From Macrostomum lignano (taxonomy: Eukaryota), in contig NIVC01000527.1 of assembly GCA_002269645.1 (NCBI GenBank), positions 248,001 through 312,000 on the forward strand: 64,000 nucleotides of DNA, given 5' to 3'. This document shows positions 42,451 through 64,000 of this stretch, in pieces. Position 1 is the stretch's first letter. Every line of letters starts with the position of its first letter. The position numbers were made by a program, and so were the translations under genes. Below the pieces are notes generated by a model. It was not told the DNA's origin and ran no database searches. It saw only the letters and a list, made by a program, of their open reading frames with translations.

Positions 42451-42582
42451 GCATTGTCTTCAAAGCCCCTTCATTGCTGCTCATGCCAGGAAACTCAAAC
42501 ACAAGAACTCAAATGTAATCACATATTAGAGTAGGTAGGCACAACATATCGGCACCATAAAAAACAGCCAGTTGCCCCAACT

Positions 42583-42887: not shown

Positions 42888-42911
42888 CTGTTTGATTGGG
42901 AATTGAATTTT

Positions 42912-43500: not shown

Positions 43501-43689
43501 ATCCCCTGGAATTCTTGGGATTTACCAATTCTAGCCCACCGGAATCCTGGGATTTTTTAATTTTTTGGATGATAAGGATAATTGTCCCTTAGAGAATATT
43601 AGGACTTTCTAATAGAATAGGCAACTTTTTTATCCCATATTCCCCGAAAGAATCAAATTCGACAACCTCCCCCCATCTCCAGCACCAAC

Positions 43690-44576: not shown

Positions 44577-45776
44577 CTGAGCCTCCTCCAGCCTGTCCGC
44601 CTCCCCAGCGGCCAGCAGCTCTGCCGCTTTCAGCCGGGTCTGAGCCTCCTGCCGCTCCCGCTGCTCCCACGCGTCGGCGGCGGCCTGCGCCTCGGCAGTT
44701 TGAGCGTCCAACTTGGCGGCCCGGCGCTCCGCTTTGCCCGTCGCCTTGGCAACCGCTTCAAGCTCGGTGCGCAGCCGTTCAAGATCTTCCCGAGCCCGAG
44801 CTGCTCGCGCTTCGGCAGACTCGGTGGCCTCCGTCTCCGCAGATTTGAGCAGCTGCTGGTGCTCGTCGTTTGCGGACTTTTTCCGCGTCGGCTTCGGCGG
44901 CTTTGGCGGCGGCGGAGGTCGACGCCCGCCGGCAGCCTGTTTGACGGCGTCGGCAACAGCCTGGCGAAGCGAGCGCGGCAGCAACTCGACGTCGATGCCG
45001 ACACCACCGGACTCCGTGTCGGCTGTCGATGGTCTGGTGCCAATGGCGGCCTCCTCCTCGCGCCGCTCGGCCAGCAGCAGCGAAGCCGTCCATGACAGCA
45101 GCGAGGGGCCCGGCGCTGCCGAGGCCGCCCAAAAGCCCGGCCGGCCGGCCGGACCGCAGAAAAACGGCAGGCCGCGCTGGAACTGCCGCACAGATGGCGG
45201 AATTTCAGAGCCGGCCGCGGCCGGAGCGGCCCGGTTTGGCACGCACGGATAGACGGTGCGGAACTCGCAGGGGCCGCCGCCACCGCCCTCAAAGCACAGG
45301 CCGCCCTGGCGGAGGGCGAAGCCGTCCGGCCTGCAGCAGGCGGGCAGCCAAGGCGCGGCCAGCTGGGCCCGGCACCTGGCCGCGATCAGCCGGTCCAGCA
45401 GCTGCTGCCCAGACGCCCCAGTCAGGGCGTCCTTCAATTCCCCAGCCTCGTCCTTCGGCAGGCGCTCAACTAGGAACACCAGCAGCGAGCGGGCGTCTCG
45501 TTCGCTGGGGTACAGCAGGCTCTGATAGCCCAGCTCGCCTCTGTAGCCCAGGCCTCGGACAGCCTCGGCCAGCTGCTGTCCGATCCGGTAGCGGATGTTC
45601 ATGCCGTCAGGCAGGGTGATGGAGAATGACTCGTCTGGTTGCATGAGTCGCAGGCAGCGGCCCACAGCTTCCACCATCATCTCGGCAGTGAGCTGGCCAA
45701 TTGAGGTCACCTTCGGGTCCCAGTCGCAGCCAATGGAGACCAACTGGCGAATAACGTTTCTGTCCACTTCCTCCAT
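44577..45776 (-). CDS. CCDC22: CCDC22 exon 1
   Basis: MEEVDRNVIRQL...TAEMMVEAVGRCL...LGYRGELGYQSLLYPSE...LVFLVERLP matches the CCDC22 N-terminus; donor |gtgatt in phase 0. Confidence 0.95.
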
Positions 45777-46062
45777 TGGGTGGGATGCTAACTGACTGTA
45801 ATGGGGGATTGTTTCGATAAAAATTAATGTGTTTCAATAATACAACCAATTAAGCCTTGATAATTAGTGCTAGTTGCATTCAAATTAAGTATCTAGAAGA
45901 CACCAAATTTAATGTGTTCCTAGTCATCATTGTTTAAGTTTGGATTTTAAGTGTAAAAAAATATGAAAAATTCCATTGCATCCTCATCAACCTAATCTTG
46001 ATCCTTATCTTCATATATGCACAACCCCGCCCCCGCCAATTTACACTGGCCGTGCAACTTAT

Positions 46063-46153
46063 GTTAAACAGTAGGAGTAACTATGACTGTGTTTATATCT
46101 ATTTTAGCTAGGCCCTTGCCAGCCAGCCATTGGCAGGGTGTTGCGCATGAATG
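46063..46153 (+). other. decayed 28S rRNA fragment, copy 2
   Basis: gttaaacagtaggagtaactatgact (22/26 to 28S GGTAAACGGCGGGAGTAACTATGACT), plus gcgcatgaatg at 46143-46153. Confidence 0.5.
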
Positions 46154-47269
46154 CCTCACCTTACCATTCCATTTCCATTTGCATCAATCTCCACTTCATT
46201 AGATTTACCATCAATGATCATAAATTATCTTTATCAAATATTCATTGTCAATCATACTATTCATTTGTCTTATATTCAAAGTTAAACATTAATTTTAACT
46301 TTTAAAAAATTAATAATCTAACAAAATATCTATATTAAAATAATATAGATAGTCTTAAGAGTGGAAATACCATGCCAATGACATTTACTACATGACTACA
46401 TGACTACAACACTATGCATACTAATAGACAATGAAATTAAAATTTTAAGTGATTGATAAATATTTATTATTATTATTATAGAGCTATTGGACTAAAAAGG
46501 ACCTAAAAAATCCCTATGTCTATATGGAATAAAAATAATTTTTATATTCTCTGTGACATATTGTGCATATGGTAAAACTATCTAAGACCTTGCTAAAAAC
46601 AAGAATTCCCATAAAACTGCATTTTTAAAAGTATAAAACAGTTGTAGCACAGTATCTCCAATTAGCAAGGATAGTAGTTGGGTGGTCATCCCTTTCCCTA
46701 ATTAATTTTTAGAATTAGTGCAATGCATTATACTAAAATCTTACCAAAAATGCATTTATTAAAAAATTATTATGGTCATCCCATAGAGAGATAGGAGCCT
46801 AGGAGGGTAGTGACCTAGTGGCTGCAGCCCTTTCTATCTAACCACTTATACAACCACTGGTATGAAGGGAGTTGAGACAAGTCTAAGTAAGTTTATTATA
46901 CTATAGTCAATATAGACCTATTTAATCTTAAATTAATCTTATATAATACAAATTACAATTATTTTCTATTGTTCAATATTAATCTACAATAACAATATGT
47001 ATAGGCCCTATATTGTTGCTATAAAATTAATTTGGACTATTTTTTAATCTTAATACAATTGAAATAAAAAATGAACACTAAAAGCCAGGTTAGAAATTTT
47101 GAGTATTATATAAGCTTTTCATTTTTAGACTGCAAAGTATAATACCAGTACTAGTACTAGGCCATATTTAGTTAATATGCCTTTTTTGATATGCCACACT
47201 AAAGAGACATGGTGGCCATGTCTATAATCCAAAACATAAAAACGACAGCCATGTCTCTAATAGTCCCTA

Positions 47270-47460
47270 AGTCTATACTTATAGACATGGCTGGCTCTAA
47301 TATTATATTAAGCTCTAATATTATAGACTGTATTTCTAATAGTGCCCAAGTCTATACTTATAGACATGGCTGGCTCTAATATTATATTAAGCTCTAATAT
47401 TATAGACTGTATCTCTAATAGTACTTACATCTATACTTATAGACATGGTGGCCCAGTTAA
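47270..47460. repeat. 79-bp tandem repeat, about 2.5 copies
   Basis: gacatgg recurs at 47284, 47363 and 47442. Confidence 0.85.
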
Positions 47461-47753
47461 TATTAGAGCTTATAGACATGGCGATTTGGCAACCATGTCT
47501 ATATAATATAGAATATATCTTACACTGGAGACAGCAGCCATGTCTATAATACCTGCATAGCGCCAGCAGCAATATCATTAATATTGAATAGCAAATGAAT
47601 TTATTGACACAATTTAAAGCAATAGTAGCTACCATGCCTATAAGCTGTAAGCTCCAACATTTTTTGACATGGCCACTGTGTCTAGATACCTGGTATAAGT
47701 ACTCCATTTTTGATATGGCTTGATTTTATTCTTTATCCCAATCCCATTAAATA

Positions 47754-48530
47754 CGAGGGTGTTGCAAAAGTTTCCGGACTAGTGTTCGCTAAAGCACAAT
47801 TCTTATCAGATTTGGATGAGGTTTCATCCATAAACTATTTGGTTATTAATAAGTGCCAGGCTAAAATGTTGCATGACTAGGACAAACACAGCCTACATTA
47901 GAGCCAAGTTAAGCCTGAGGGTCTATGTTATTTCACACGATTTCACTCGAAGAATGAGCCGACCAAAAAACAACTCAGATTTTGGTTCGAAAGAAAGTCA
48001 ACGTCACTTCATTATGGCATGTCAGCGCATGGGTAAGACACCAACGCAGACTTTTAACAAAGTTTGCACTGCTTTCGGTGATCATGCGTTGGGTCGCACA
48101 CAAGTGTTTGCCCACCACCGACTTGCTGCTGAAGATCAAACAAGCGTCGCTGATGCTGCTCGCTCTGGCCGTCCGCGTTCCAGCACAGATGACAACAATG
48201 CGGCTGCCGTGCTCCAATATTTGGAGGCAAACCCATCTGCATGTGTGCGTGAAGTGGAGAGTGTGTGCGGCGTTCACTACTCGTCTGTGAGTCGCATTCT
48301 CCAACGCCACGGCTGGTCGAAGATCTGTGCTAAGCTAAGTGGGTGCCACGCGAGCTGACAGAAGAACACAAAAAAGCACGGGTGCGATGTTCGGCAGACA
48401 ACTGGGCTGTATGGAACGAGCTTGGTGATGAGAAGTTCAAGGAGCTTGTAATCACAATGGACGAGACGCCGCTGCCAATGTTTAATCCACTGACAAAGCA
48501 GCAGTCGATGCAGTGGGGGCCAAAGGGGTT
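47754..48530 (+). mobile_element. 3'-truncated mariner transposon with a frameshifted transposase
   Basis: TA|CGAGGG TIR start; ATG 47954; HTH region with RSGRP; (W)VPREL after a frameshift near 48335; ITMDET (first catalytic D). No right TIR seen. Confidence 0.88.
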
Positions 48531-51500
48531 CATGAGGAAAGGAAGACATGCTTTGCCGCTCACCGATTGGGCCGCCATGTTTCAATTCTAACCGGTTGGT
48601 TGGAGGGCAGCCCCCACCTTCAGAGAATGACTGCACTCAACTTCTGCGGTCGATAACCAAGTTAGCCCAATTCCCGAGTCCCGAGCAATATTGAGAGCCA
48701 ACCAATCCATGCAATGGGACATTCTCTCTCTAAACTTTGCCGAAGGGAGACTAAATCGGCTTTGAATGCAAAGGAAAGAGCGAAATAAATTTACAGTGTG
48801 TGTGGATTCCAGGTTTTCAGATCACGGCTTCTCGGGCCATGTGGTGTAATGTGAACATGCAGGAAGCTACCCAATAACTGCGTCAGCACTGACATTGAAA
48901 TCCTTTTCAGCATTCTCCATTCCCACTACAGGATTAAGCGTGCTGACAGTAATTTGGGCAGGGCGGCACAGAGACAGAGACTATATATAACTTTTAAGAG
49001 ACAATTAATTGATCAGGTGACTGCTGTCAAGGGTTGGGTCAAAGGCTGTCGCCAAGTAATCGACCATTGGTCTTCTTGCCGACAGCTTCTGGTTCCCTCC
49101 TCCTTGGCTTATCGACGGAGACTTCATAGAAAGTCAAACTGATAGCCAACTTTCTTGTGCTGGGCCAGAAGATGTTGAGCAGGCTTTATTTTTAGAAGGC
49201 ATTCTTGTCTCATTCAGAGAAGAAATTCATTTACTAATTTGCTTATGACCTTCCAAAAAGAAGGCCTGCTCACCTCCTTCTGCCCCAGCACAAGTAAGTT
49301 GGCTGTCAGTTTGACGAGGTGTCTCACCTAGTTATAGACGAGTTGAAACATCTTTCGTAATTAAAAAAATTAATCTAGAGACTTAAGAGACTTCAAAGCC
49401 GAGAACTCCGAATATTCTAACAGAACAAAAAAGCCTGGGGTGCTGAAACGCAATATGGTGTCTAAACTCTGAAGTGACTGTGACCGTGAATAAAAACACT
49501 AGAATAGTATGCTCACATTTTCCAAAAGAGTGTCACAAATCCTAATATTTCACGGGGAGTCAGTCAGCTTCTTTGCCTCGGTGCTGTCTTTTGCTGATTA
49601 ACTGTGGCTCAGGAGGAAAGGAAGACATGCTTTGCCGCTCACCGACTGGCCGTGATGTTTAACTTCCAGGGTTTGCTTGAGGGCAGCTCCGCCTTCAGAG
49701 GATGCACTCAATATATTTCGGGACCCGATAGCCAAATAGCGCATTAATCCCAAACAGTATGGACTCCAGAGAGCAACCCAATCCCTGAAATAGGACATTC
49801 TCTTTTAAGACACTTCCAAAGAGAGTCTAAACTGGCTACGAAAACAAAATGGAAAGGGCAAATAAATTTACTGTGGCAAAGGGAAACAGGAAATACATAT
49901 TTGCATGATGCAAAATACAATTAAGGATTCGGGATTCATAAACACATTTTCTCGGTTGCAGCATAACAAGCTGTCTAGTCAGCAATGTCCAGGATTGAAA
50001 ATTCAGCTTCCGAAAACGGAGTATAGAGAGGGAGAGAGGAGAGCGGAGGATAGAGAGGAGAGCGCTCGAATGGCGCTTCAGTCTTTTGTTAGTGTGCGGT
50101 GCTAAATATTTTTCAGTGCTGTGTTGTCGAAGTCCTAGAGTCCGTCTTTGCTCTTACGTCACAAAAGATTCTCATTGAGCAGATTATATGTTAGATAATC
50201 AGATTCCTCAAGCAGCGGGCAATTCGACTATTTCCACTGAGGTCAAATCGGCCAAAAATTAAATCGCTGCATTTAGCACCTTTCGCACCCCTGATATGTT
50301 TTATGTTTTACGCAACATGAAATGCTAGGGACTTCATGAGGGCGCCTGAGGCGATGAGGCAATAGACTGACACGCAGCAAGCAGGTAACATTGTACTCAT
50401 ATTGAACACTGATTTGGCCTTATTGTGTAATTCGCACATTTTGGGGCTCTGCCTCGTCAAAATTTTACCCTGTCGTGAAATGGGATAACGAAAAGCTTGG
50501 AAACTGATAGGTGAGACAGTGACTTCAGTGCGGGCTTCTGTCCTTGCGCAACATGCAGGGCCATCCGTGCGAGTGAAGCAGTTGAAATACTGAAGGAGCA
50601 GCCTAATACTCATAAAAAGGGGAAAGAAAAACAAACACGAACCAAGTAAATTTCTTCGCACATTTCATTCACACATTCACAAGTTTTCAATTCGAATGTG
50701 TCATTTGGCTTTTTGCAACAAGAGGGCACTACGGCTCGAATGCGGGCAGCAGGACTATTTATTCATGTTGCATTGCACGTGGAAATAGTCTCTTCGTATC
50801 CCAATATTCTCAATTCTCCTCATATTCTCCCTGTCTCTTCAATCCCCTCATATTCTCCTTGTCTCTTCAATCCCCTCATTTCCTCCAGTCTCATTTTCTC
50901 CTCCCTCCTCTCCACTCACTCTAGTAGTCTTTCACTCTGCGAATCTGTCACTCTATTAGTCTGTCACTCACTCTCCTCAGCTTTCCAGCTCACTGACACT
51001 GAAATTCCCTGCTCATCTATTGCCTGATAATATGCATGACCATCCCCAGATTAAAATCAACAGAATACGAAGATGGATAGAATGGAAATTGCCGCAAAAA
51101 AGTTTTCGTGTCTTCGAATTTCCATTGCAGCCATGCATGAGCCCTGTCACAACTGTACTAGTAAAACTAAACGGAGCGGAGGGAAGCGGAAAGCGATCCG
51201 AGAGGGGCAAAGTAGTCGAACTAGGTAGCATTTCTATCCTCAAATCCTCAAATCTTCACTCACGCTCTCAAATCCCATCACTCTCTCCCTCTCTCCGCCT
51301 TTGCCTCGCTTTCGTTCCCTCCGTCTCTCTTGTTCTGACACAGAAATTCCCCTTAGCACTTTAGCTCACTGACCATTCGCAGATGATAATAATAATAATA
51401 ATAAGTGAGTTGGAAATTTGTATCGGTCGACAATTAGCTGACATTTGATGAGCCATTCTTTGACAAATGAGCACGCGATGTAGATGGCCTAAGGTGGATT

Positions 51501-51740: not shown

Positions 51741-52160
51741 ATGGAGAGCCTTGCCTCAGCGACTTTGGATACACCGATTTCGATTGCTGAGGTAGTACGC
51801 ACCCAGCTCTGCGGCGCTTCCGGATCGCCATCAAGCGCCAGCAGCGGCGCTTCCGGATCGCCATCAAGCGCCAGCAGCAGCGCTTCCGGATCGCCATCAA
51901 GCGCCAGCAGCGGCGCTTCCGGATCGCCATCAAGCGCCAGCAGCGGCGCTTCCGGATCGCCATCAAGCGCCAGCAGCGGCGCTTCCGGATCGCCATCAAG
52001 CGACAGCAGCGGCGCTTCCGGATCGCCATCAAGCGCCAGCAGCGGCGCTTCCGGATCGCCATCAAGCGCCAGCAGCGGCGTGTCGGACAACGGCGACAAC
52101 GACTGCTACGTCGCTAACGGCGTGAACAACGGCAGCGGCTGCAACGGCACCAACTCTAAC
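51741..52160 (+). CDS. candidate first exon of the recombinase-PWWP gene (Ser/Gly repeat); 3' boundary uncertain
   Basis: MESLASATLDTPISIAEVVRTQLC followed by in-frame 33-bp repeats (GASGSPSSASS)x8. No clear donor found. Confidence 0.4.
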
Positions 52161-52438
52161 GTCTCTACTCTTCCCCCTGTCTCCACTCTTCCCCTGTCTC
52201 CACTCTTCCCCTGTCTCCACTCTTCCCCCTGTCTCCACTCTCCCTTGTTCCGCGATCACACATGTGCTAGTTTCTTCACATATATTGTATTGTTTTTTGT
52301 TCTCTTGACCCTTAATTGTTAGTTTTGCCATGTTCTATAAAAATAGGTTGACTGAAACTGGCTTATACTTATCTATTGCAAAGAACGAAAATAACGAACT
52401 TCTGATTTATTTTTAAATGACCCCTTGAACTGGCACAG

Positions 52439-52685
52439 ACCGGCAACAGCTCTGCCAGACGGCAGCGCTTCAGCAGCCGTGGTGCCAGACGGCAGCGCTT
52501 CAGCAGCCGTGGTGCCAGACGGCAGCGCTTCAGCAGACGGCAACTTTTGCCAGCTGTGTTCACTAATCATTCCGGGCACTGCTGACAATTTTCGGAAGCA
52601 TAAAGCACGCTGGCATGCCGACGAGCTTGTTCCACTTGTAGACAAGCCGGTCAACGTGCAAGAGTTGACCGATGAAGCCCATCAG
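52439..52685 (+). CDS. recombinase-PWWP gene exon with a C2H2-type zinc finger
   Basis: CQLCSLIIPGTADNFRKHKARWH (C-x2-C...H-x4-H); strong donor cag|gtaagg in phase 0. Acceptor is 52439 or 52450. Confidence 0.65.
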
Positions 52686-53492
52686 GTAAGGGCAGATAAT
52701 TTTACGCGATGGCTCTTTTTTTATACTTTTCTTAATTGAGTCTCAGCTCTCAACAGTTTTCCTTCTCATCCATCCAAGCAAGGCGTTCATTCTAACCTGT
52801 TAGATAGTGCTTCGTCCAGCCTATTTGACAGTGTCCGTGATTCTCTTGCTAGCGAATTGAAGCTTCGTAACTTCGTAACAAAGATCAGATCCAATCCATC
52901 CATCAAAACTTTTCTATAGAGCCAAGAGATTTTTTATTCTCACGCTGTATAAGACAAGAGAGCAGAGCAGAAATTTCAACTCTAGAATATCCTTCTAAGT
53001 AGAATGGCATTCATTCGCCGGGGCTGTTGCCCCCAGGACCCCGGGTCCTGCACGCAATGGCGTGGTGAACTATCTGTGCAGTATGAGACTGGTATGGCCC
53101 TTATCCCAACCAGCGATGCTCACACCTGCCTCCCCTGGCGGGCTGATAGCTAAAGAGACTCTGTCTCCTGATTTTCACCTTGCAAGGCGCACTTCGAAGG
53201 GTACTCGTCCCGTGGGTGTTAAGGCAGGCTCTCGGGCCTTGCCGAGCTAATTCGTTGGCGCCGGGTCCTGGTGTGACCATATAAACGCACCCTCTAATGT
53301 CCCAGTGTAACTCCGTGCTGATGGACGCTTGGCCAGGGAGTAGTCTGGTCGCTAACGGTTCCCCTTGCGCTTTTGGGTCCCCCGCAGGGTGGTATTTCGC
53401 TTTTTGGGGGCCTGCCGCTTGGTTTGGGGTTGCGGCCTTGCGGCTCTTTGCCTGTGTTCTGCAGGAAGTCCCACCTTTTTTAATTCCAGCCA

Positions 53493-55013
53493 ATGGCTTC
53501 TAACCGAAGTACCCAACCGGCTGTGGATGACACAGTGCCTCCGGCCTCGGCTGGGGCCGTGGACTCCGCGGCCATACCACCTGCTACCATCGGGGACGCC
53601 TCGGCGAGACCCGTGGAGCCAACTCTGAGCGGTGCCTCCGAGAAGACACCTGCTACTCCAGCTGCCAAGCAGCTGAGCACCACCTCTGGAGCTGCCCGCC
53701 GTCGACTTAACAAGGCGAGGCGGGCCAAGGAGGGCGGAAGCCTAACCGGCGCCAGGGGCCAACGGCCCGCGGCAGCGGAAGCTTCCCAATCTGGGGCGGT
53801 GGCGGAAGAGGGCCTCGAGCCCACTGAAGCCCCTGTCCAGGATGGGGAGGCCGATGCAGCCGGGAGGGTGGACAGCCCACCTGAAAAATGCTCCACCGAC
53901 CCCCGGGCCTCCTACGCTGATGCGGCAAAGAGGCAACCGGCGGTTGTCATTCTGGGGAAGGACGCGCGCCTGTCTCCCGATCAGCTGAAGCAGGTGAGAG
54001 GTGCCGTTGATGGCCTCCTGTGGAAGCAAACTCTGAAGGGCACGCCTCTGAACATTCATTCGAATGCGACGAGGGACTCGTGCCTTCTCATTTGGCCCAG
54101 TGATGCTGACTCGGGTCGGCGGCTCCTTGAGCTGCTGCCCGAGCAGAGCTGGGACCTCAACCTAGCCTTCTGCAGAGAGGACCAGCGCCCCCGGACCAAG
54201 AGGCATCGAATCTGGGTTCCGGCCAGGAGCGTTGTTACCTCTGCTGACGAGCTCCGGAAAGGACTGCTAGCAGTCAACCGGGAGCTTCCCGCCGCGGGCC
54301 TAGTGGTGCATGACACCCTTAAGCGCACCGACGGCACTGGCTTCACAGCCATCCTGGGGCTGTCGGACGCCTGGATGAGGCGCTATCCGCACGGCAGCTT
54401 CATCAACGTCGGCCTTTGGAAGCTGCGCATCCGCTCCTACGAGGCCGACCCTCCCCGTGGTGGTGAGCAGGGCGGGCGGAATGCCGAAGCAGCCGGGGCC
54501 GTGGCGCGAGCTTCTGCTCAGGCTGCCAAAGCAAACCGCCCCGCCCGGCAGCACGGCCGCGCGGGTAAAGCCGAGCGCGCTGCTGAGGGCGGAGGAGACC
54601 GACGCCCGGCACGCAGCACCAAGCGACGCGGCCTGTACCAGCGTGCAGCTGAGGCAGTCCGTACCGCCAAAATCACCCAGCTGAGGAGAGAGGTCGCCGG
54701 GACGCCTAGGCGCACCAGTTCGTCCAGGGAGGGTGGGGATGTCCCAGCTGGGCCCAACCCCTCGGGGCAGGGCCGCCTGGAGACGGACCCGCCTGCCCAG
54801 GCGGCTGGCTGCTCCAGGGCATTGGGCCAGTCTGAAGCGGAGGACCCCATGGCTGGTGGGCGAAGGGCGGCGAACGCTGCCTATTGCCTTCCGACCAACC
54901 GGGGGCCTTTTGCTGAAGAAGAGCCCATGGACACCGGTGACCCCGACCCGAAGCTGGTGAGCGCCGAGGAGGAGGAGGAACTCCTGGCGACTGCAACACC
55001 CGATCTGCACTGA
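53493..55013 (+). CDS. retrotransposon ORF1 (gag-like, DUF4780-like core)
   Basis: 506-aa ORF; RPRTKRHRIWVP...GLLAVNRELP recalls the DUF4780 domain of LOA-type ORF1s (from memory). Stop overlaps the ORF2 ATG (TGATG). Confidence 0.8.
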   Translation: MASNRSTQPAVDDTVPPASAGAVDSAAIPPATIGDASARPVEPTLSGASEKTPATPAAKQLSTTSGAARRRLNKARRAKEGGSLTGARGQRPAAAEASQSGAVAEEGLEPTEAPVQDGEADAAGRVDSPPEKCSTDPRASYADAAKRQPAVVILGKDARLSPDQLKQVRGAVDGLLWKQTLKGTPLNIHSNATRDSCLLIWPSDADSGRRLLELLPEQSWDLNLAFCREDQRPRTKRHRIWVPARSVVTSADELRKGLLAVNRELPAAGLVVHDTLKRTDGTGFTAILGLSDAWMRRYPHGSFINVGLWKLRIRSYEADPPRGGEQGGRNAEAAGAVARASAQAAKANRPARQHGRAGKAERAAEGGGDRRPARSTKRRGLYQRAAEAVRTAKITQLRREVAGTPRRTSSSREGGDVPAGPNPSGQGRLETDPPAQAAGCSRALGQSEAEDPMAGGRRAANAAYCLPTNRGPFAEEEPMDTGDPDPKLVSAEEEEELLATATPDLH

Positions 55014-58000
55014 TGCCAGCGGCTACCTGGTGTCTGCAGATCAACACCCAGCACTGCGTGGCGGCGTCAGTCAACCTGATGCGCACGACAGAGCAACAGC
55101 TTCCGGGCCTGGTCTTCGTACAGGAGCCCTGGATGACTAAAGGTAAGCCAAATAATGTGCCATCTGACTACCACTGTTTTTGCATGGCGGACTCTCAATA
55201 TCGCCCAAGATCTCTGGTCTTTGCTGCAAAAGCTTTTGAAGCATGGATGAGACCTGATCTCTCGACTGGGGACATCTGTGTTGTTCAAATCAATAACCTC
55301 ATTCCAAATAAACCTGCGCTGGTAGCATCTGCCTATTTCTTAGGCGATGCCCCAGTAGTCTGCGACGCACTAGTCAACCTCATTGACTATGCCGCGTCCC
55401 GACGGTTCGAGCTGCTCATTGCAGGGGATGTGAACGCACACCACCTGCATTGGGGCAGCAAGAACACCAATAACAGAGGCGAGGAGCTGCTGGCCTACGT
55501 CAGCAGCACAAACCTCAATTTCTGTAACGTGGGCAATGCACCAACGTTCAATAATGGGCGGTGGGCCGAAGTCATCGACACCACCATCGCCTCACCCGGA
55601 CTGCTTTCCGCAGTCACGGGCTGGCGAGTGTGGGACGAGGACTCGCTCTCGGACCACCGCTTTATCCGCTTTTGCATTGGGCCGACCAAGCAAAAGCCTA
55701 AAGTCACTTGGAGTCGGAACGTCAGGAACACCGATTGGGCCGCCTTTGGCTCGAAGCTGAGCCGCGGCCTTCGGGATCTTGACCCCCCCCCAGTGACCTC
55801 TCTGACTGCCAGGTGATGGATGATCTCGCCTCCTCCCTGGGCGGGGCGATCACCACTGCCTTTGAAGCAGCCTGCCCCCTAAAGGCCTATAAAGGCAAGA
55901 AATCTGCTCCCTGGTGGAACCCAGAGCTCGGGGCCCTTCGGCGCCGAGCCAGGACCCTCCAAAGGCGAGCACCAAAACCAAAGACCCATCTGATATAGAG
56001 GCCTACACCCGTGCGATCCACGAGTTTAAGGGCCAAGTCAGAAGGGCCAAGACGGCCAAGTGGCGCCAATATTGCGAAGGGCTTGAGGGCTCTCGCCCCG
56101 TAGCCCGCGTGGTTAAGGCACTCACTAATGACCGTTTTTCTAAACTCTCTGTTGTGAAGAGACCTGATGGCTCGGTCACAGAGAGTTCGGAAGAGACTCT
56201 AGAGCTCATGCTCAACAGTTTTTTCCCTAAATCTCCGACTCAGCAGGGCCCGCCCGACCACACAGTGGGAGGGCAAGGCCTAGCAAAGTCTATGATCACC
56301 AAAGACCGCATTATTAGAGCGGCAAGGTCCTTTAACCCGTTCAAGGCGCCTGGGCCCGACGGCATCTACCCAGCGTTCTTGCACGAGGCGGTAAAAAACC
56401 ACCGCTTCCTGGATCTGCTCTGTCGTCTCCTTCGAGCTTGTGTGGAGCTGGGCTATGTACCAGTTGCGTGGAGAGAGGCCCGGGTGGTCTTTATCCCCAA
56501 GCCTGGAAAGAGCGACTACCAATCGGTGAAGGCCTTCAGGCCTATCAGCCTCACCTCTTTCTGCCTCAAGCTCCTCGAGAGGTTGGTGCTTTGGCGCCTA
56601 CTTTCGGTCGAGCTGAAGCGCTTCCCACTCTCGCAGAACCAGCACGCCTTCCGCGCGGGCAGGTCAACCGAGAGTGCTCTCCATGTCATTGTTGACTTCC
56701 TGGAGAGGGCCGTTCTTGGCAGCGGCTTTGCCCTCTCGCTTTTCCTGGACATTGAGGGGGCCTTCGACAACGTCATCTTCGAGGCCTTTTGCAGAGCCCT
56801 GGAATCCAGGGCCACGCACCCTCACCTTGTCCGGTGGATCATGTTCATGATCCGGAACCGCACTGTTGTGGCCCACCTGAACGGCAGCTCTCTTTCGGTG
56901 CCTGTCCTGAAAGGGGGCCCCCAGGGCGGCGTTCTCACCCCCGTTCTCTGGAACATGGTCATGGATGAGTTGCTTTGCAGTGATCTCCACGACCCCATTC
57001 TCAAGGTGGGCTATGCCGATGATGTGACCGCGATATGCGCGGGCCCCTCGGTTGATACCATCAGAGACCTTCTGCAGGGCTTTCTGGGACGAGCGGAGCG
57101 TTGGGCAAACCAATGTGGCCTTAGACTCTCAGAGTCGAAAACCACAGCAGTCATGTTTACCAACAAACTGGTCTGGACCATTAAGCCCCTCACCCTCTAT
57201 GGAAAGAATATTTCCATGGAGAAGCAGGTCCGCTGCCTGGGCCTCACTCTGGACCACAGGCTTAACTGGACTCCGCACATTCAAACTAAAGCCAAAAAAG
57301 CCCTGGCTGTCCTGGCTCAGATCAGGCGCGCCGTGGGCACCACCTGGGGGCTCACCCCCAGGAAGCTGTGGTGGATTTACACTGCCATCATCCGCCCCTC
57401 GATCAGTTACGCCAGCCTCGTGTGGGCTAGCGGCCTGAGCGTCAAGAGCAACCTCGACGCTCTCTACAAAATCCAGGGCAGAGCCTGCCGCATGACTATG
57501 GGCGCTCCACCCTCTACTCCTTTTGAAGGCATGAATGCCTTCCTCTGTGCCCCTCCTTTGGATATATATATCAAAGGAGAGGCGGCGAAGAGCACCCGGC
57601 GTCTTCTGGATGCTGGGGTGGCCTTCAAGAAAGTGCGGGCCTTTAAGAAGCGGTCGCTTATCCCGCACTCTGACCTCTGCCTCAAGGCTCTCGAGGAGTG
57701 TGGCGGGCTCAACATCCTCACGGACTCGATCCCAGCCACCCTTCTCCTGAGCCAAAGGTATAAGGTCACCATTCAGCCTCGACACGAGGCGAGTGACAGC
57801 TGGAGCGATTCTGAAGTCCACTGTTACACTGACGGCTCTATGAGGCATGGTCGTTCAGGCTTCGGAGCTTGCGTCTTCTTTAAGGGAGAAGTGGTGTGGA
57901 GCTACTCCCAACACACTGGGCTCAACTCCAGTGTTTTTCAGAGCGAGGTGCTTGCCATCAGCTCCTGCGCGGCAGAGCTGCGCCGAAGGCAGCTTGGCGG

Positions 58001-58715
58001 CCGGAAATTTATTTTTCACTCTGACAGCCAAGCTGCCCTTCGGGCCCTCTGCCGCAGCACCGCCAGCTCCAGGTCCGTCCTGGACTGCAACACCCAGCTC
58101 AACGGGCTTGCGCTAGGCAACCAAGTGGAGCTCAGATGGATCCCGGGCCACGCCGGCTTCCTCGGCAACGAACGCGCTGACCTGCTGGCCAAGGCTGGCT
58201 CCGTCGGCGCGCTGCTGGGGCCGGGCCCGGGAGCCCCCATCCCCGCCTCGGTGATCAATTCCCGCGTTAAGCGCTGGGCTGACTCCGAGCATCTCCGCAG
58301 GTGGCACGACACCCGGAATTGTAGGCAATCCCGTGCTGCCGTCCCCTGCCCCTCTCCTCTCCTGCGTAGAGCCCTCCTCAGGCTCAACTGCAGAGACCTC
58401 AGAGCAGTTAGCATGGCCCTCTCCGGGCATGGCTGCTTCTCTCGTCACCGTTTCCTTCAGGGCCAAGTACCCGAGGAGCGGTGCCCCTTCTGCCGCTCAG
58501 GCAGTGAAAACGCCGAGCATTTTATCTGCCACTGCCCGGTTTTCACCAGGGCCAGGCTTACTCACCTCGGGCCAAACCCGGTTCTCTCCGACGTTTGCAG
58601 GCCCGAGAGCATCCCGCTGCTCGCCCGGTACCTCAGGGACACCGGACGAGCTGATTTCTTCCCCACCGTCGGTGAGGAGGACCGCGCTGCAGGCGAGACC
58701 GACGGGTCCCCCTGA
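55013..58715 (+). CDS. retrotransposon ORF2 (APE endonuclease, RT, RNase H, C-terminal CCHC), with two 1-nt frameshifts
   Basis: VQEPW, GDVNAHH, SDH (APE); KAPGPDG, LDIEGAFD, GPQGGVL, YADD (RT); YTDGS, SDSQ, WIPGH (RNase H); CPFC...H...C. Frameshifts near 55790 and 55972. Confidence 0.93.
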
Positions 58716-59007
58716 GCGACACCACTTCAACGGAAGTCGTTGGTCGCCAGGGGCTAGCGGAATGGGCGGTCTCCTCCGCCTCCTCGCTGCATCCGCCGGA
58801 CGCCCCCTGCAGCTAAGTCAAGTTAAGTCAATGGCATTCATTCTCGAATAGCTACCCCAATTAGAAAAGAATTCCAATAGAAAATCTATAGGCCTAACAA
58901 GATCTAGTATATGATTATGAGTATATATACTGAACTTCTCTAGTACACCCACTGGCTGATATGAAAAAACTGCATAGCTATAAATTTTTCCACCTCACTG
59001 TTCTCAG

Positions 59008-59073
59008 ATTGCTGAAGACAAGACACATGAGAGTCCAAGCAGCAATTTTATTTCTGCTCTGATTCCATACCTG
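59008..59073 (+). CDS. recombinase-PWWP gene exon
   Basis: ttctcag| IAEDKTHESPSSNFISALIPYL |gtaagt; 66 nt, phase 0/0. Confidence 0.7.
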
Positions 59074-59977
59074 GTAAGTGCTATGATTCTATAGAAATGA
59101 ACTATTTTTTACTTAGGCTATTATTAGACTTTGTCTTATTATAAAGGAGTAGGACTAGTTCAGTTCATAGGCCTATATCAAATTTTTATAGAGCTACAGT
59201 TTTTTGTAACTAAGTTTTATATTTCCTTAGGCCTAGCTAGGCCTACTTAAAGCTCAACTTGAAGAACAAAAACACAAAACTAAATGCATATATTTATTGC
59301 ACTTATTTTGACTTAAGCTAGGAAAATTAAGCTCGCTTGAGTTTAGATTGAAGTGAACTGTTTTCTAGTAAAAAATAAACATTTTGTATTTATAGTTCTA
59401 TTATATATTTATAGATTTACTTTTGGATTTTGGATTCAGATTTACTTGCTTTATATTACTTTGAAGTTTTTTTGACTAATATATACATATTTAATAATTG
59501 CTAATTCTAATTATGCACTCTTAAAGGCCATGCAAGTATTGTAAATATGTATCCATTCTAGCTGTAGCTGGAGGTAGTTAGTCCTGAAAAGTATCAGATA
59601 TACCCTGACTGTTCATTGCAATTTGTTCATGGTTGATACAATCTAAACACTCTAGGTTGCAAATAATCAATTAATTCTAGATGGACAAGTGCAGTCCAAA
59701 GTGTCAGATCAGTTATATACATATATCTGTCAGGGACTACAAAGTTTACAAACACCCTTAAGACATGTATAGTATCTAGGCCATGCTTCTAGGTTCTAGT
59801 TGGCCTTTATCTAATGAAAAAATGAAACAGTTTTTGAAGTGCAAAATTCAACTATAGGGTAGTCACCCTATTGGAATAAATGACATTTATGTGGATGGTC
59901 ATCTGGCTCACTTTTAAAGAGTTTGGTGTGGCTAGGGTAGGGGGTTGGTGCAGTGCGGGTGCAGCGCAGCATGTGCT

Positions 59978-60037
59978 GGTAAACGGCGGGAGTAACTATG
60001 AGTTTATTTAGATAGTCAAATGCCTCGTCATCTAATT
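59978..60037 (+). other. 28S rRNA fragment (helix 69-71, R2/I-PpoI target region), copy 3
   Basis: GGTAAACGGCGGGAGTAACTATGA 24/24, middle 10/16, AAATGCCTCGTCATCTAATT 20/20 against the conserved eukaryotic 28S sequence. Confidence 0.85.
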
Positions 60038-60277
60038 TGTAAAGTGCATCAACCCCGATTTAGTGCTTACCACATAATTATAATTATTGAATAATTGTAA
60101 TTACCATATAATTACTTACCTAACCATATAAACCCGGATTATCATATAATTACATATATGGTAAAATACTCTTATCTCAGATCATAGGGGCATAGGTGCT
60201 TGGCACGCAAAATCTGAGGGCCTCGGCGCGTGTTTGCAGGTTTTGAGCATTTATTCCAATAGGGCGGGTAGACAAGG

Positions 60278-60375
60278 TGGCAGCCAAGAAAGAGGATCTG
60301 GTGGGCAGAGGAGGTGGCAGCCAAGGAAGAGGATCTGGTGGGCAGAGGAGGTGGCAGCCAAGGAAGAGGATTTGG
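60278..60375. repeat. 37-bp tandem repeat, about 2.5 copies
   Basis: Unit gtggcagccaaggaagaggatctggtgggcagaggag. Confidence 0.85.
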
Positions 60376-60657
60376 TGATGGTGATCATATCCAACCCCTG
60401 ATAATAATGAGTTTATTTCAGGTATTTTAGTATAAAATTTTATTGCATAGAAAAGATGTTATTGTAATGTTTCACTTAGTCCTTAAATTGTTGATTGCTA
60501 ATAGCTAGCTAATAAGAAGACATGTTATGTCCTTATGATCTACTTAAGCTACATATTTGGAAATTCTATTTAACAATGTATTGGTATTATTTATATAGGC
60601 CATTATTCAAATGGCTACTTAATTAAATTTCTTTTTGTTTATTTTTTAACATAACAG

Positions 60658-60795
60658 AACTCTCTGAAAGGAGCCATGGGTGGTGGACTGGCCGAATCAA
60701 CTATCAGGAAGGTTGGCTCATACATGAACCGACTGATGGACCTGATTGGAGCCAATGCAATTGAAGATGTAATTCATGAGTCACACCGAGATTTG
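60658..60795 (+). CDS. recombinase-PWWP gene exon (putative core-binding domain)
   Basis: ataacag| NSLKGAMGGGLAESTIRKVGSYMNRLMDLIGANAIEDVIHESHRDL |gtgagt; 138 nt, phase 0/0. Confidence 0.75.
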
Positions 60796-61118
60796 GTGAG
60801 TCATATACTATGCTCTTGAGCTGTTTGCAAATGGGCCTGGCCTACATTACATTGTCATTTTATTTAAATAAATTGAATATACTTTATAATTTAAATGTTT
60901 AAATACAATTTTTTTATTTTTTTATTTTCATTAGTCTAGTATTTTTTCTACGAGTCTTTGGTAATTCCAAGATGTCATACTTTTACTGCATGCTACAATG
61001 TCGAAATCAGTAATTGCAATATTTTCCTTTACTCAGGAATGCTTTGTATAGGCCCTAGCTATAAATTGTTACTGACACAGTTTAATACTGAAACTTTATA
61101 TCCCCACAATTTATATAG

Positions 61119-61328
61119 ATCTTGGAAACCCTGACCACTGTGACCTTCGGGGTCCTGAAAGAGATGGTTGGCAGTCTCCAAAAGTTGGGCGACTACCTGA
61201 CTATGAACCGGCTGAGCAGCATTAATGCCAGTGGTCTCCGCGACCACCTCACGAGCTTTTGTGCCTGTTGTCCAAAGTGGACACAGTACTATAACAAGCG
61301 GAAGAAAATCTATAATGCTGCACTAAAA
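61119..61328 (+). CDS. recombinase-PWWP gene exon
   Basis: atatag| ILETLTTVTFGVLKEMVGSLQKLGDYL...YNKRKKIYNAALK |gtgagt; 210 nt, phase 0/0. Confidence 0.78.
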
Positions 61329-61685
61329 GTGAGTAAAATTCATAACATCTGTGTAATTTGTTTACATATATTCTTTGTCACTCCATGCTGCTCTTTAATG
61401 TGCACTTTTGCATTCTTAGTTGTGCTGCAAAAGTTTTAGGGGAAAGTTATACATGATTTATGCTAAAAATTTTGCAGGCGTTTTAGCCTTGGTTTTGAGT
61501 TACTAATTCTAGCAGGCCAGTGTCCTGTCCTAGAAAGCCGGTATAAGGCTATAGTCACAAACAATACCCATTTTAACATGTTGGAGGTAAATTGGAGTTC
61601 ACCTGAAAAACTTATAAAGCAAAAAAACTCTTTGCTTTGTTTAACCTAACCTAACCTAACCTAACCCTAACTCTTTTTATCCCAG

Positions 61686-61931
61686 GACAAAAAGCATGCT
61701 CGCCTCCTCAGCGACAACCAGGTGGCCGAACTGATGGCCATGAAGGCTCACCTGCTGGCCGAGACCATCACGGATGATGCCAAGGCTGATGGAATTTCCG
61801 ACAACGAGATGCTGGCTTTCGGAATGACTGTGTGCTTCGGCAATGGCAACGCCAACCGGCAAGATGTGGCTTGCAACGCCACTCTGCAAGAAGTTCGGCA
61901 GTGGGCCAAAGACCCATCGAAGGAACTATGG
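61686..61931 (+). CDS. tyrosine recombinase exon (catalytic Arg I)
   Basis: cccag| DKKHARLL...GNANRQDVACNATLQEV...KELW |gtgagc; 246 nt. Confidence 0.82.
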
Positions 61932-62350
61932 GTGAGCCCTTTATTGAGTTAAACATTTGTCTGAAATTAGGATAAGAACTATAGTCACTGCAGGCGACTA
62001 TAGCCAACAATGGACTCCAAACTCTGAGCTTGGCTGGAAGAGGGCTCAGAGTTGTGTCAGGGCTGGGAGTTGGGTGTCAGGGGTCTCAAAGTTGGGTGTC
62101 AGGGGTCTCAAAGTTGGGTGTCAGAAGATTATGTTGGTGTATTTTATTTCTATATTAGCAGCTTGAAATAATCATCTATAGTTTGTGCTTGTACTTATAA
62201 GTTTTATTTTCCCTTATCAAACATATCTGCATAGTTTTATTGAAGCGGAGGAAAAATGGGTCGATTGCATAATTGTTTACAGGAATATAATTCATTTGAA
62301 ACATTGCATCAATTCTTAGTTTGAATATATATTTGACTGATATTATTCAG

Positions 62351-62599
62351 GTAGCCAAGCACAAGACCAGTGCCTACTTCGGCGCAGCTAAAGTTAATGT
62401 GGCCGAGTGCTGCAGCCTGCTGCTGCGGCTGCTGCGACGTCGCGAAGCCGCCAACCCAACCGACGGCGACGCCAATCTGCCGTTCATCAAGTTTAAGTAC
62501 GGCGGCTTTGACGGACTGTTTCGGGAACACCGAGAGAGTTTTAGTCCGCTGCTGGCAGGTGTCACCTGCACCGATTTCCGAATTTTTGTCGAAACGAAA
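62351..62599 (+). CDS. tyrosine recombinase exon (catalytic Lys, TxxR)
   Basis: ttcag| VAKHKTSAYFGAAKV...GVTCTDFRIFVETK |gtgagt; 249 nt. Confidence 0.84.
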
Positions 62600-62843
62600 G
62601 TGAGTGGCTATTCTAAGATGCTTTTCATATATCGACTACGTTACATAGATCATTTGGCTTCATTTTTCATTTATCACCAGAAATTGGGGGGGGGGCGAGA
62701 GTTTAGGAAGTGGCACTTCTGAGTCGCCTGTGCACCCGAAATCTGCTACTGGTCTAGTCTATTCCCATCATACCTGAAACTGTTAAATTCAGTAAAATAA
62801 CAAATATGTTTTATCTTCTTCAATTCGCCATCTTCCTTTTAAA

Positions 62844-62996
62844 GCACTACTGGCGGGCGAGGACCCGCAACTTGTGGCGGACCGGCTTTATCATACGCCA
62901 CAGGTGGCGCGGAATTTTTACCAGGTCCACACGGACTGGTACTGGCAGGCCGGTAGCGCTGTTCTGCAGCAAATAGTGAAGGAGAGCGCCGGAAGG
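62844..62996 (+). CDS. tyrosine recombinase exon (His III and nucleophilic Tyr)
   Basis: ALLAGEDPQLVADRLYHTPQVARNFYQVH...KESAGR |gtaagc. The obvious acceptor aaag| is 1 nt short of phase 0. Confidence 0.72.
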
Positions 62997-63141
62997 GTAA
63001 GCTCTGCTGAGAATTTCTTTTTGCCCTAAGCTGTCTTTTATGCTGCATGCTTCCTAATAGATAATTCCTTATTTATTTTCTAAGTCTAGTTAAACAAACG
63101 AGAATTAATGAAAGCAGAAAAATTTTCTTTGAAAAAATTAG

Positions 63142-63852
63142 GCCACACGTCAGCCGATTCAGTCCCGGCCATCGACGCAGCATTCGCGGCACGCCATCAC
63201 CGCCGCGTCCGAGCGCAGCGCCACCAACGCCGCCGCGTCGGAGTGCAGCGCCACCGCCCCCGCTTCAAACCGCAGCGCCGCCCGCGCGTCGAAGCGCAGC
63301 GCCACCACCGCCGCCGCGTCGGAGCGCAGCGCCACCACCGCCGCCGCGTCCGAGCGCAGCGCCACCAACGCCGCCGCGTCGGAGTGCAGCGCCACCGCCC
63401 CCGCTTCAAACCGCAGCGCAGCCCGCGCGTCGAAGCGCAGCGCCACCACCGCCGCCGCGTCGGAGCGCAGCGCCACCAACGCCGCCGCGTCCGAGCGCAG
63501 CGCCACCGCCCCCGCGTCGGAGCGCAGCGGCACCACTGCACCAAGCAATCACAACACCTGGCAGCCAAGTGTCATGGTGCTTGCCTTTTGGCCTGGCGAT
63601 GGTGAGCAGTGGTGGCCTGCAATTGTCTGCTTGCCGCCAAGAGGCAAATTAGCTACACGTGGCAACCGCGTCCATGTGCAGTTTTTGGACGAGCCCCCAA
63701 GCCGGGATTGGGTCGACAACGTGCGGCCCGCGGCAAACCATGGCATTGGCTTCTAGGCTAAAAGCCAGGACTTCATCCTTTGCATGAAGAAGCTGAAGCT
63801 GGCTTTAAAAATGTCGAGATTGGAGCGCCTCGAGCACTTTTTGAAAGTTTAA
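63142..63852 (+). CDS. last exon: Ala/Ser/Arg repeat linker + PWWP-like domain, with in-frame TAG at 63754-63756
   Basis: ttag|gcc is in frame with VLAFWPGDGEQWWPAIV...RVHVQFLDEPPSRDWV (cf. MSH6 PWWP RVHVQFFDDSPTRGWV). After the TAG the frame continues AKSQDFILCMKKLKLALKMSRLERLEHFLKV to TAA 63850-63852. Confidence 0.72.
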
Positions 63853-64000
63853 CTGACTAGTAACTATAACTAACTAGCTAGTAACTAGTAACTAGCACTC
63901 AAACAAGTTCGCAAAATTTTACTAATTGCATTTTCTTCAATTAAATCTCGAAATATACTCGTATTATAATTAGCTAATTTGTTTGTCAGCACAAAGAAAA

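What the first reader, a model, noticed from the sequence alone, without database searches (positions are those of the whole stretch)
51741..63852. Hidden spliced gene encoding a zinc-finger / tyrosine recombinase / PWWP fusion (Crypton-like element or domesticated recombinase)
Phase-0 exons with canonical splice sites join into Ser/Gly repeat, C2H2 finger, a helical domain (AMGGGLAESTIRKV), then a tyrosine-recombinase catalytic set in correct order and spacing. That set is NRQDVACNATLQE (Arg I), KHKTSAYFG (Lys), TCTDFR (TxxR replacing HxxR) and VADRLYHTPQVARNFY (His, Tyr nucleophile). A repeat linker and a PWWP-like domain follow. Eukaryotic tyrosine recombinases are known from Crypton and DIRS-type elements, and PWWP domains read H3K36 methylation (established). 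A recombinase with its own PWWP would suggest chromatin-guided excision or integration, like LEDGF tethering but built in (inference). I do not recall this architecture being described. No element ends were found in the window.
Basis: partly seen in the sequence, partly recalled or inferred. Interest (0 to 1): 0.9.

Follow-up and report, generated by a model that had tools for sequence, protein, structure and literature searches.

The report
Unannotated flatworm gene with PWWP domain
The window (Macrostomum lignano, a free-living flatworm) holds a real but unannotated spliced gene with a genuine PWWP chromatin-reader domain, but no test here supports calling its central part a tyrosine recombinase, and this copy looks damaged.

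Summary
The window is Macrostomum lignano contig NIVC01000527.1:248001-312000. A + strand chain of exons with the species' GT[GA]AG donors is real: 5 such in-phase exons against 0-3 in 1000 composition-preserving shuffles. The proposed frame has the best codon usage, and exons are GC-rich against AT-rich introns.

The C-terminal PWWP domain is real (MSH6 PWWP E=4.5e-6, also NSD3 and NSD2). An in-frame TAG (63754-63756) cuts it, and the similarity continues past that stop.

The recombinase call is not supported:
- No hit in Pfam, PHROGs, NCBIfam or PDB sequences.
- HMMs built from published Crypton, DIRS and prokaryotic recombinases score the query at shuffle level. The DIRS model finds the other active recombinase groups at median 18-46 bits.
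- The His of HxxR, invariant in 38 of 38 references, is absent.
- The remaining pentad spacing arises in 4.8% of shuffles.
- No homologue exists in 5.8 billion proteins, or (exon E alone) in 1.84 billion representatives.

The fold could not be tested, because the tools refuse exon-joined sequences. The joins of the zinc-finger exon (across 8 kb holding a fresh LINE) and of the PWWP exon are unverified. The Ser/Gly exon and the linker are minisatellites. The gene lies in copy-specific, transposon-rich DNA absent from two paralogous loci.

The parts
47754..47777 (+). Mariner-type terminal inverted repeat following a TA. It marks the left edge of the copy-specific DNA that holds the gene.
   Evidence: Collinearity with paralogous contigs L001 and L003 stops here, and the empty site is visible in L003. 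There is no second repeat copy in the window. A mariner-like ORF lies at 47873-48358.
51811..52080 (+).
   Evidence: TRF reports 8.2 copies at 98% match. ORFs are open in several frames on both strands. No compatible donor or phase links it to exon B.
52439..52685 (+). Exon B, holding a 30-nt repeat and then the zinc-finger-like motif CQLC-x13-H-x4-H (52548-52616). Acceptor CACAG|, donor CAG|GTAAG. Its link to the rest of the gene is unverified.
   Evidence: No Pfam zinc-finger hit. No initiator exon was found.
53017..58829 (+). Full-length non-LTR retrotransposon (ORF1, endonuclease, RT, RNase H) lying in the putative B-C intron. It is flanked by a perfect 14-bp target-site duplication AATGGCATTCATTC (53003-53016 and 58830-58843).
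   Evidence: Pfam Exo_endo_phos_2 2.2e-19, RVT_1 3.4e-28, RNase_H 3.7e-11. The duplication is read.
60658..60795 (+). Exon C (46 codons, phase 0/0). It contains ATG 60676 in a GCCATGG context (MGGGLAESTIRKV), a plausible true start.
61119..61328 (+). Exon C2 (70 codons, phase 0/0), TATAG|...AAA|GTGAGT.
61686..61931 (+). Exon D (82 codons, phase 0/0).
62351..62603 (+). Exon E. It contains KHKT and TCTDFR. The strong donor AAA|GTGAGT follows 62599 and the weak donor GTGGCT follows 62603.
   Evidence: Exon E alone has no homologue in 1.84 billion representatives.
62845..62996 (+). Exon F (LLAGEDPQLVADRLYHTPQVARNFY...SAGR), donor AGG|GTAAG. Its start is ambiguous: AAAG|62845 needs phase 1, while GAG|62862 and CAG|62904 are phase 0.
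63200..63536 (+). It may be coding (acceptor TTAG|63142) or intronic (alternative acceptor GGCAG|63564, phase 0).
63564..63753 (+). PWWP beta-barrel part (VMVLAFWPGDGEQWWPAIV ... RVHVQFLDEPPSRDWV).
   Evidence: PDB phmmer gives MSH6 27.5-29.9 bits and NSD3 23.4-26.8 bits. Pfam PWWP scores 23.2-24.2 bits, below the gathering score of 25.6.
63754..63756 (+). In-frame TAG inside the PWWP domain.
   Evidence: The alignment to the MSH6 PWWP runs across it.
63757..63852 (+). Post-TAG continuation in the same frame (AKSQDFILCMKKLKLALKMSRLERLEHFLKV), the C-terminal helical part of the PWWP domain, ending at TAA 63850-63852.
   Evidence: It adds 2.4-3.4 bits to the MSH6 and NSD3 matches. It extends the Pfam match from profile position 56 to 84 of 93. 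It has the best codon score of the six frames.

Best explanation
This is a lineage-restricted, unannotated protein-coding gene of Macrostomum lignano, or a recently disabled copy of one. It is not a demonstrable recombinase.

Shown:
- The firm core is a chain of five exons (60658-62996, about 330 residues, probable start at ATG 60676). It encodes a domain with no detectable relative anywhere.
- 145-567 nt downstream lies an exon for a genuine MSH6/NSD-type PWWP domain.

Inferred mechanism: the PWWP barrel tethers the protein to nucleosomal DNA or methylated H3K36, and the orphan domain supplies an unknown activity on chromatin.

This copy is probably compromised. A TAG cuts the PWWP domain before its helical part, and the best donor of exon E and the first acceptor of exon F are out of phase.

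The upstream zinc-finger exon is only a possible part of the gene. The Ser/Gly and linker 'exons' are minisatellites that happen to stay open. The whole locus sits in copy-specific, transposon-rich DNA. It begins at a mariner end and is absent from the two paralogous CCDC22 loci, so it arrived or survived only here (inferred).
For: - Exon chain beyond chance: 5 in-phase exons against 0-3 in 1000 shuffles.
- Codon frame and GC contrast favour the proposed exons.
- All donors fit the species motif GT[GA]AG (motif from PMC8629364).
- The PWWP domain is significant against solved PWWP domains, and the match crosses the TAG.
- No homologue of the core in 5.8 billion proteins, in 1.84 billion representatives for exon E, or in viral and metagenome contigs.
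- No family hit in Pfam, PHROGs, NCBIfam or PDB.
- Organism and contig are identified.
- No gene is called between CCDC22 and window position 55794. GenBank 'coregenes' excluded transcripts overlapping repeats (PMC5730564).
- Synteny breaks at a mariner terminal repeat, with the empty site in a paralogue.
Against: - There are no RNA data, so no junction is verified.
- The TAG and the E/F phase conflict could be assembly errors or allelic variants, in which case the gene may be intact elsewhere.
- An orphan domain with no homologues might also be a very fast-evolving transposon protein.
- The PWWP aromatic cage keeps only 2 of the 3 residues known in MSH6: Tyr is replaced by Glu in the alignment. 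The cage positions are from my own knowledge. Methyl-lysine reading is therefore not assured.
- Single-sequence AlphaFold models were low confidence (pLDDT 58-64) and gave no significant fold matches.
Confidence: 0.5

Rival explanations
1. The core is an extremely diverged tyrosine-recombinase-derived domain (Crypton-like or domesticated) fused to a PWWP domain. It would act by chromatin-guided recombination or, if inactive, by DNA binding.
For: - The layout can be read as Arg ... Lys ... xxxR ... His ... Tyr with spacings 29, 72, 24 and 9, inside the ranges of 38 reference recombinases. Only 4.8% of shuffles do this.
- The best hhalign local alignment (DFR...LYHTP...NF) is in register with box II.
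- The CryptonI HMM aligns KHKT...LPFIKF in register.
- Domesticated DUF3504 domains are also nearly invisible to general recombinase HMMs, scoring a median of 3.2 bits with the DIRS model.
- The gene lies in inserted, copy-specific DNA.
Against: - All profile scores are at noise level: -1.7 to 0.9 bits, or no hit at all with the DIRS model, with shuffle maxima of 5-9 bits.
- hhalign gives P=0.13 and probability below 1%.
- Alignments from different HMMs disagree in register.
- Pfam, PHROGs and NCBIfam show nothing.
- The His of HxxR is absent, although invariant in 38 of 38 references.
- When added to the reference alignment, 4 of 6 catalytic columns match, as happens in 20% of shuffles.
- The His-Tyr spacing exists only with the weakest splice choice at the E/F junction. 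The CAG|62904 alternative deletes the 'His'.
- p of about 0.05 is post hoc in a scan of 64 kb.
Confidence: 0.2
2. The three parts are not one gene. The zinc-finger exon, the five-exon core and the PWWP exon would belong to separate transcripts or be gene fragments. The PWWP exon could, for example, be a trans-spliced separate gene or a fragment of a PWWP gene carried in with transposon-rich DNA.
For: - Exon B has no initiator exon and lies 8 kb upstream.
- Exon C carries its own ATG in a strong context.
- The M. lignano spliced leader ends in ATG, and about 30% of genes are trans-spliced (PMC8629364).
- Acceptor CAG|63564 is in phase for a leader-donated ATG.
- The F-G link runs through a minisatellite open in three frames.
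- The PWWP domain is closest to MSH6 and NSD, where it sits in unrelated proteins.
Against: - All parts are on the same strand, closely spaced (145 nt from F to G), and phase 0 at both sides of the F/G junction.
- No stop or polyadenylation evidence lies between them.
- The PWWP frame has no ATG of its own before the barrel except Met 63574, which lies inside strand 1.
Confidence: 0.2
3. The ORFs are chance open frames in repeat-rich DNA and there is no gene.
For: The window is full of minisatellites that make long ORFs on both strands. Exon A and the linker are of that kind.
Against: Five in-phase exons with species-typical donors arise in none of 1000 shuffles. The codon frame signal supports coding. 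The PWWP match is significant.
Confidence: 0.03

Closest known systems
PWWP domains of MSH6 and NSD2/NSD3 (PDB 2gfu, 6oqm, 6g24, 7vln)
   Same: The core is QWWP and the signature RVHVQFLDEPPSRDWV matches RVHVQFFDDSPTRGWV. The C-terminal helix aligns as well. E=4.5e-6.
   Different: The rest of the protein is unrelated to MutS or SET-domain proteins. The first aromatic-cage residue is Glu instead of Tyr. The domain is interrupted by TAG. The Pfam score (24.2 bits) is just under the gathering score (25.6).
Crypton tyrosine recombinases and their domesticated DUF3504 derivatives (KCTD1, KIAA1958, ZMYM2-4, QRICH1, WOC; Kojima & Jurka 2011, PMC3212892)
   Same: The general idea matches: a zinc finger plus a roughly 300-residue helical or mixed domain in an intron-containing gene, residues readable as R, K, R, H and Y in allowed spacing, and a location in inserted DNA.
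   Different: There is no profile similarity to CryptonA/I/F/S, DIRS, prokaryotic recombinases or DUF3504. The HxxR His is missing. No copies or ends are known. No described Crypton carries a PWWP domain.
LEDGF/p75-type tethering of integrases through a PWWP domain
   Different: No enzyme identity is shown for the attached domain here, so the parallel is only a hypothesis.
RNase H-bearing non-LTR retrotransposons (LINEs), for the element in the large intron
   Same: ORF1, then AP-endonuclease, RT and RNase H, with a C-terminal Cys/His motif and a 14-bp target-site duplication.
   Different: It is not part of the gene. The endonuclease and RT are in different frames in this copy.

Membership tests
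Tyrosine recombinase superfamily (Pfam Phage_integrase PF00589; Crypton/DIRS recombinases) | Significant match to a recombinase sequence profile | tested here: not met
   Pfam gave no hit at E<=10, nor did PHROGs or NCBIfam. Seven HMMs from PMC3212892 Additional file 4 gave -1.7 to 0.9 bits, and the DIRS HMM reported no hit at all; shuffles reach up to 9 bits. The DIRS HMM finds the other active recombinase groups at median 18-46 bits. hhalign gives P=0.13.
Tyrosine recombinase superfamily | Catalytic residues R-K-H-x-x-R-[H/W]-Y in order and spacing | tested here: not met
   R, K, R, H and Y can be placed at spacings 29, 72, 24 and 9, which happens in 4.8% of shuffles. The His of HxxR is Thr, whereas it is His in 38 of 38 references. 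The His-Tyr block depends on the weakest E/F splice choice.
Tyrosine recombinase superfamily | Cre/lambda-integrase catalytic fold | not testable with these tools
   Structure prediction refuses exon-joined sequences. The single-exon model had pLDDT 58 and gave no significant Foldseek match.
Crypton DNA transposon | Multiple copies with defined ends and empty sites in the genome | not testable with these tools
   Only 64 kb plus three 23-kb paralogous stretches were available. There is no second copy in the window, no terminal repeats, and no related protein in the M. lignano GenBank set.
DUF3504 (domesticated Crypton recombinase) | Match to the DUF3504 or CryptonA profile | tested here: not met
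   The DUF3504 HMM gives -1.6 bits and the CryptonA HMM 0.9 bits (59 of 2000 shuffles score as high or higher). True DUF3504 scores 51-125 bits with the CryptonA HMM. Pfam gives nothing.
PWWP domain (Pfam PF00855) | Sequence match to PWWP domains, including the (P/Q)WWP core | tested here: met
   PDB phmmer gives MSH6 E=4.5e-6 and NSD3 4e-5, and NSD2 at E about 0.02. Without the post-TAG part the match is still E=3.1e-5. Pfam gives 23.2-24.2 bits, just below the gathering score of 25.6.
PWWP domain | Complete aromatic cage for methyl-lysine | tested here: inconclusive
   In the alignment, Trp and Phe are kept and the Tyr position is Glu. The cage positions in MSH6 are from my own knowledge.
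PWWP domain | Intact, uninterrupted domain | tested here: not met
   An in-frame TAG at 63754-63756 lies between the barrel and the C-terminal helix.
C2H2/BED-type zinc finger | Cys2-His2 ligand pattern and a profile match | tested here: inconclusive
   The pattern C-x2-C-x13-H-x4-H is present (52548-52616), but there is no Pfam hit at E<=1.
Non-LTR retrotransposon (intron insert) | AP-endonuclease plus RT domains and a target-site duplication | tested here: met
   Pfam hits. A perfect 14-bp duplication is seen.

The most novel reading that the evidence does not exclude
The orphan 330-residue core is a tyrosine-recombinase fold diverged beyond sequence detection. It would be naturally fused to a PWWP reader and possibly a zinc finger, that is, a eukaryotic recombinase or Crypton-type element with built-in chromatin targeting. 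This architecture is not described in the searchable literature.
Probability: 0.2. Interest if true: 0.8.

Novelty: new member of a known kind. Interest (0 to 1): 0.3.

Why it matters
As it stands, the locus adds an unannotated, lineage-specific PWWP-domain gene, probably a damaged copy, to a flatworm model genome. It also shows how repeat filtering hides genes in the GenBank annotation of M. lignano. This is of modest interest.

It would matter much more if the core proved to be a recombinase fold. A recombinase carrying its own H3K36-methyl reader would be a natural example of chromatin-guided integration, and a new branch of eukaryotic tyrosine-recombinase elements. One structure prediction of the joined protein and a look at existing RNA-seq data would settle this.

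Tried and rejected
- The search for homologous proteins on the 313-residue core and on the PWWP region: nothing.
- Exhaustive HMMER on exon E: 0 hits.
- Pfam on single exons and on both joined models: nothing for the core.
- PHROGs, NCBIfam and PDB sequence searches: nothing relevant.
- Viral and metagenome contig scans: nothing.
- AlphaFold of the PWWP exon and of exon E alone: pLDDT 64 and 58, with no significant Foldseek match against PDB. A T. brucei PWWP appears only at rank 26, E=3.6.
- Adding the query to the recombinase alignment with MAFFT: 4 of 6 catalytic columns matched, as in 20% of shuffles.
- Search for an ATG-started first exon joining exon B in the right phase: none.
- Search for a second mariner terminal repeat or any element termini: none.
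- Exact look-up of the LINE ORF1 to fetch DNA beyond the window: not on record.
- Idea that the PWWP exon is the start of an MSH6 gene: rejected as unsupported. TAA follows at 63850, no GTRAG donor precedes it, and no annotated M. lignano protein shares its words.

Full report
**Source of the window**

A single-exon ORF for a CCDC22-type protein (44520-45776, - strand) is 98% identical to a Macrostomum lignano GenBank protein. Its cluster has three members. One of them, PAA81492.1, is 100% identical to the window's first and third CCDC22 exons; the middle exon's tblastn match is only 86%. The contig that encodes it, NIVC01000527.1 of assembly GCA_002269645.1 (Mlig_3_7), is 100% identical to window 32583-55794. 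The window is therefore positions 248001-312000 of that contig, in a free-living flatworm.

[quoted passage not shown] Minisatellites are everywhere in the window and create long ORFs on both strands.

Mostly yes for the middle, and less so for the two ends. On the + strand I confirm these exons:
- C: 60658-60795
- D: 61686-61931
- E: 62351-62599
- F: 62845-62996
- a last exon from 63142 or 63564 onward, holding the PWWP-like sequence

All donors are GT[GA]AG, the motif found at 65% of M. lignano donors (PMC8629364).

The chain is well beyond chance. Five GTRAG donors in 58844-63141 close in-phase open frames of at least 45 codons that begin after an AG. The opposite strand has one, and 1000 shuffles that keep local composition give 0-3. 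The proposed frame has the best host-trained codon score of all six frames for C, D, E, F, the PWWP part and the stretch after the TAG. Exons are 47-61% GC and introns 30-39%.

**Blemishes in the model**

1. With the perfect donor after 62599, the first acceptor of exon F (AAAG| at 62844, where GC content rises) is out of frame.
   - The frame is kept only by the weak donor GTGGCT after 62603, or by the later acceptors GAG|62862 or CAG|62904.
3. Exon B, with the CxxC-x13-H-x4-H motif, begins at codon position 3. It has no ATG-started partner exon with a usable donor in the right phase.
   - The 'Ser/Gly repeat' is a 33-nt minisatellite and the 'repeat linker' a 30-nt one. Both are open in several frames on both strands, so their openness is not evidence of coding.
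   - Exon C has its own ATG at 60676 in a GCCATGG context.
   - The species' spliced leader ends in ATG.
   - The gene may therefore start at exon C, and the PWWP exon may even be trans-spliced separately.
4. The 8-kb gap between B and C holds a full-length LINE (53017-58829) with endonuclease, RT and RNase H domains and a perfect 14-bp target-site duplication. It is a recent insertion and not part of the gene.

**The PWWP domain is genuine**

Against all PDB sequences, the last exon matches the PWWP domains of MSH6 (E=4.5e-6, 29.9 bits), NSD3 (4e-5) and NSD2. The shared signature is RVHVQF[LF]D..P.R.WV.

The MSH6 alignment runs across the TAG into the following 31 codons. Leaving those codons out lowers the MSH6 score by 2.4 bits and the NSD3 score by 3.4 bits. 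With an X at the stop, the Pfam PWWP match extends from profile position 56 to 84 of 93. It scores 24.2 bits, just under the gathering score of 25.6.

So the TAG interrupts a domain that once continued. It is a nonsense change, an allele or an assembly error. A single-sequence AlphaFold model of this exon was too weak (pLDDT 64) to give significant fold matches. Of the three aromatic-cage positions known in MSH6 (my own knowledge), Trp and Phe are kept and Tyr is Glu in the alignment.

**The recombinase reading is not supported**

- The joined core, 313-383 residues in two versions, has no hit in Pfam at E<=10.
- PHROGs, which holds many integrase families, shows no integrase hit, only three unrelated matches at E 0.14-0.34; NCBIfam shows nothing.
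- PDB sequences show nothing relevant.

To test it directly, I took the published alignment of Cryptons, DIRS elements, prokaryotic recombinases and DUF3504 genes (Kojima & Jurka 2011, PMC3212892, Additional file 4). I built HMMs for each group and scored the query with all filters off, alongside 2000 shuffles.
- The query scores -1.7 to 0.9 bits, inside the shuffle range, whose maxima are 5-9 bits. The DIRS model reports nothing at all.
- As a positive control, the DIRS model finds CryptonI, A, F, S and prokaryotic enzymes at medians of 18-46 bits.
- hhalign's best local alignment happens to be in register with box II, but with P=0.13 and probability 0.4%.
- The weak alignments from different HMMs disagree in register.
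- When the query is added to the reference alignment, 4 of 6 catalytic columns match, as in 20% of shuffles.
This is a faint, post hoc signal. The His of HxxR, present in 38 of 38 references, is missing.

In fairness, domesticated DUF3504 domains are also nearly invisible to general recombinase models. A decayed derivative therefore cannot be excluded by sequence alone. Exon E alone gave a poor model and no meaningful matches.

**The core is an orphan**

- No relative exists among 5.8 billion clustered proteins, which include the M. lignano GenBank set.
- No relative of exon E exists among 1.84 billion representatives read exhaustively.
- No relative exists in viral or metagenome contigs.
- No other copy is present in the window.

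**Context**

GenBank calls no gene between CCDC22 and window position 55794. That annotation deliberately dropped transcripts overlapping repeats. 'Hidden' here therefore means unannotated, not necessarily untranscribed.

The two other copies of the CCDC22-RecQ-PDZ block (NIVC01002896.1 and NIVC01002811.1) have an FCH-domain gene next to CCDC22. Their collinearity with the window ends at 46290 and 47753 respectively. At 47753/47754 the window continues after a TA with a mariner-type terminal repeat, while the paralogue shows the empty site. No second repeat copy and no return to collinearity occur before the window ends. The gene thus lies in at least 16 kb of copy-specific, transposon-rich DNA. 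That is compatible with mobile or transduplicated origin, but it says nothing about the enzyme.

**Verdict**

The locus is a real, unannotated, lineage-restricted gene, or a recently disabled copy of one. It encodes an orphan domain of about 330 residues followed by a true MSH6/NSD-type PWWP domain, and most likely acts as a chromatin-bound nuclear protein. The zinc finger is only a possible part of it.

The proposed recombinase-PWWP fusion remains an unproven idea, and I give it about one chance in five. No paper in the searchable library describes such an architecture. The cheap decisive tests, folding the joined protein and reading existing RNA-seq, are worth doing.

Noticed in passing
window 53003-58843: Full-length LINE (53017-58829) with ORF1 (506 aa), AP-endonuclease, RT and RNase H, and a perfect 14-bp target-site duplication AATGGCATTCATTC. 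It looks like a very recent insertion. The endonuclease and RT ORFs are in different frames.
   Followed up: partly
window 47754-48700; L003 7800-8150: Mariner-type terminal repeat (CGAGGGTGTTGCAAAAGTTTCCGG) inserted at a TA, followed by a truncated mariner transposase ORF. The empty site is preserved in paralogous contig NIVC01002811.1. The second end is not in the window.
   Followed up: partly
window 31800-47753 versus L001 and L003: Three diverged copies (about 88-98% identity) of the CCDC22-RecQ-PDZ block exist in the Mlig_3_7 assembly, as expected for the hidden polyploidy of M. lignano. Two copies have an FCH-domain gene where the window has the copy-specific segment.
   Followed up: partly
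window 1410-2218, 3195-4232, 5738-6789, 12840-13415, 14391-15332, 17378-19105, 22920-23906, 28046-29482, 38808-39464: Dense minisatellites whose periods are multiples of 3 give ORFs of 150-575 codons in several frames on both strands. This is a trap for ORF-based gene spotting in this genome.
   Followed up: no
window 61642-61671: A short (TAACC)n run, the complement of TTAGG-type repeats, lies immediately upstream of the acceptor of exon D.
   Followed up: no
window 63850-63895: Directly after the final TAA there is a 7/21-nt repeat (TAACTAG-like) that places stop codons in all three frames.
   Followed up: no
window 48527-48798 and 49606-49875: Two copies of an unidentified repeat of about 280 nt, about 74% identical and 1078 nt apart, interrupt the mariner remnant.
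   Followed up: no
window 2041-7480 (- strand): Exons of an SLC12-type cation-chloride cotransporter, judged from the ORF translations only.
   Followed up: no
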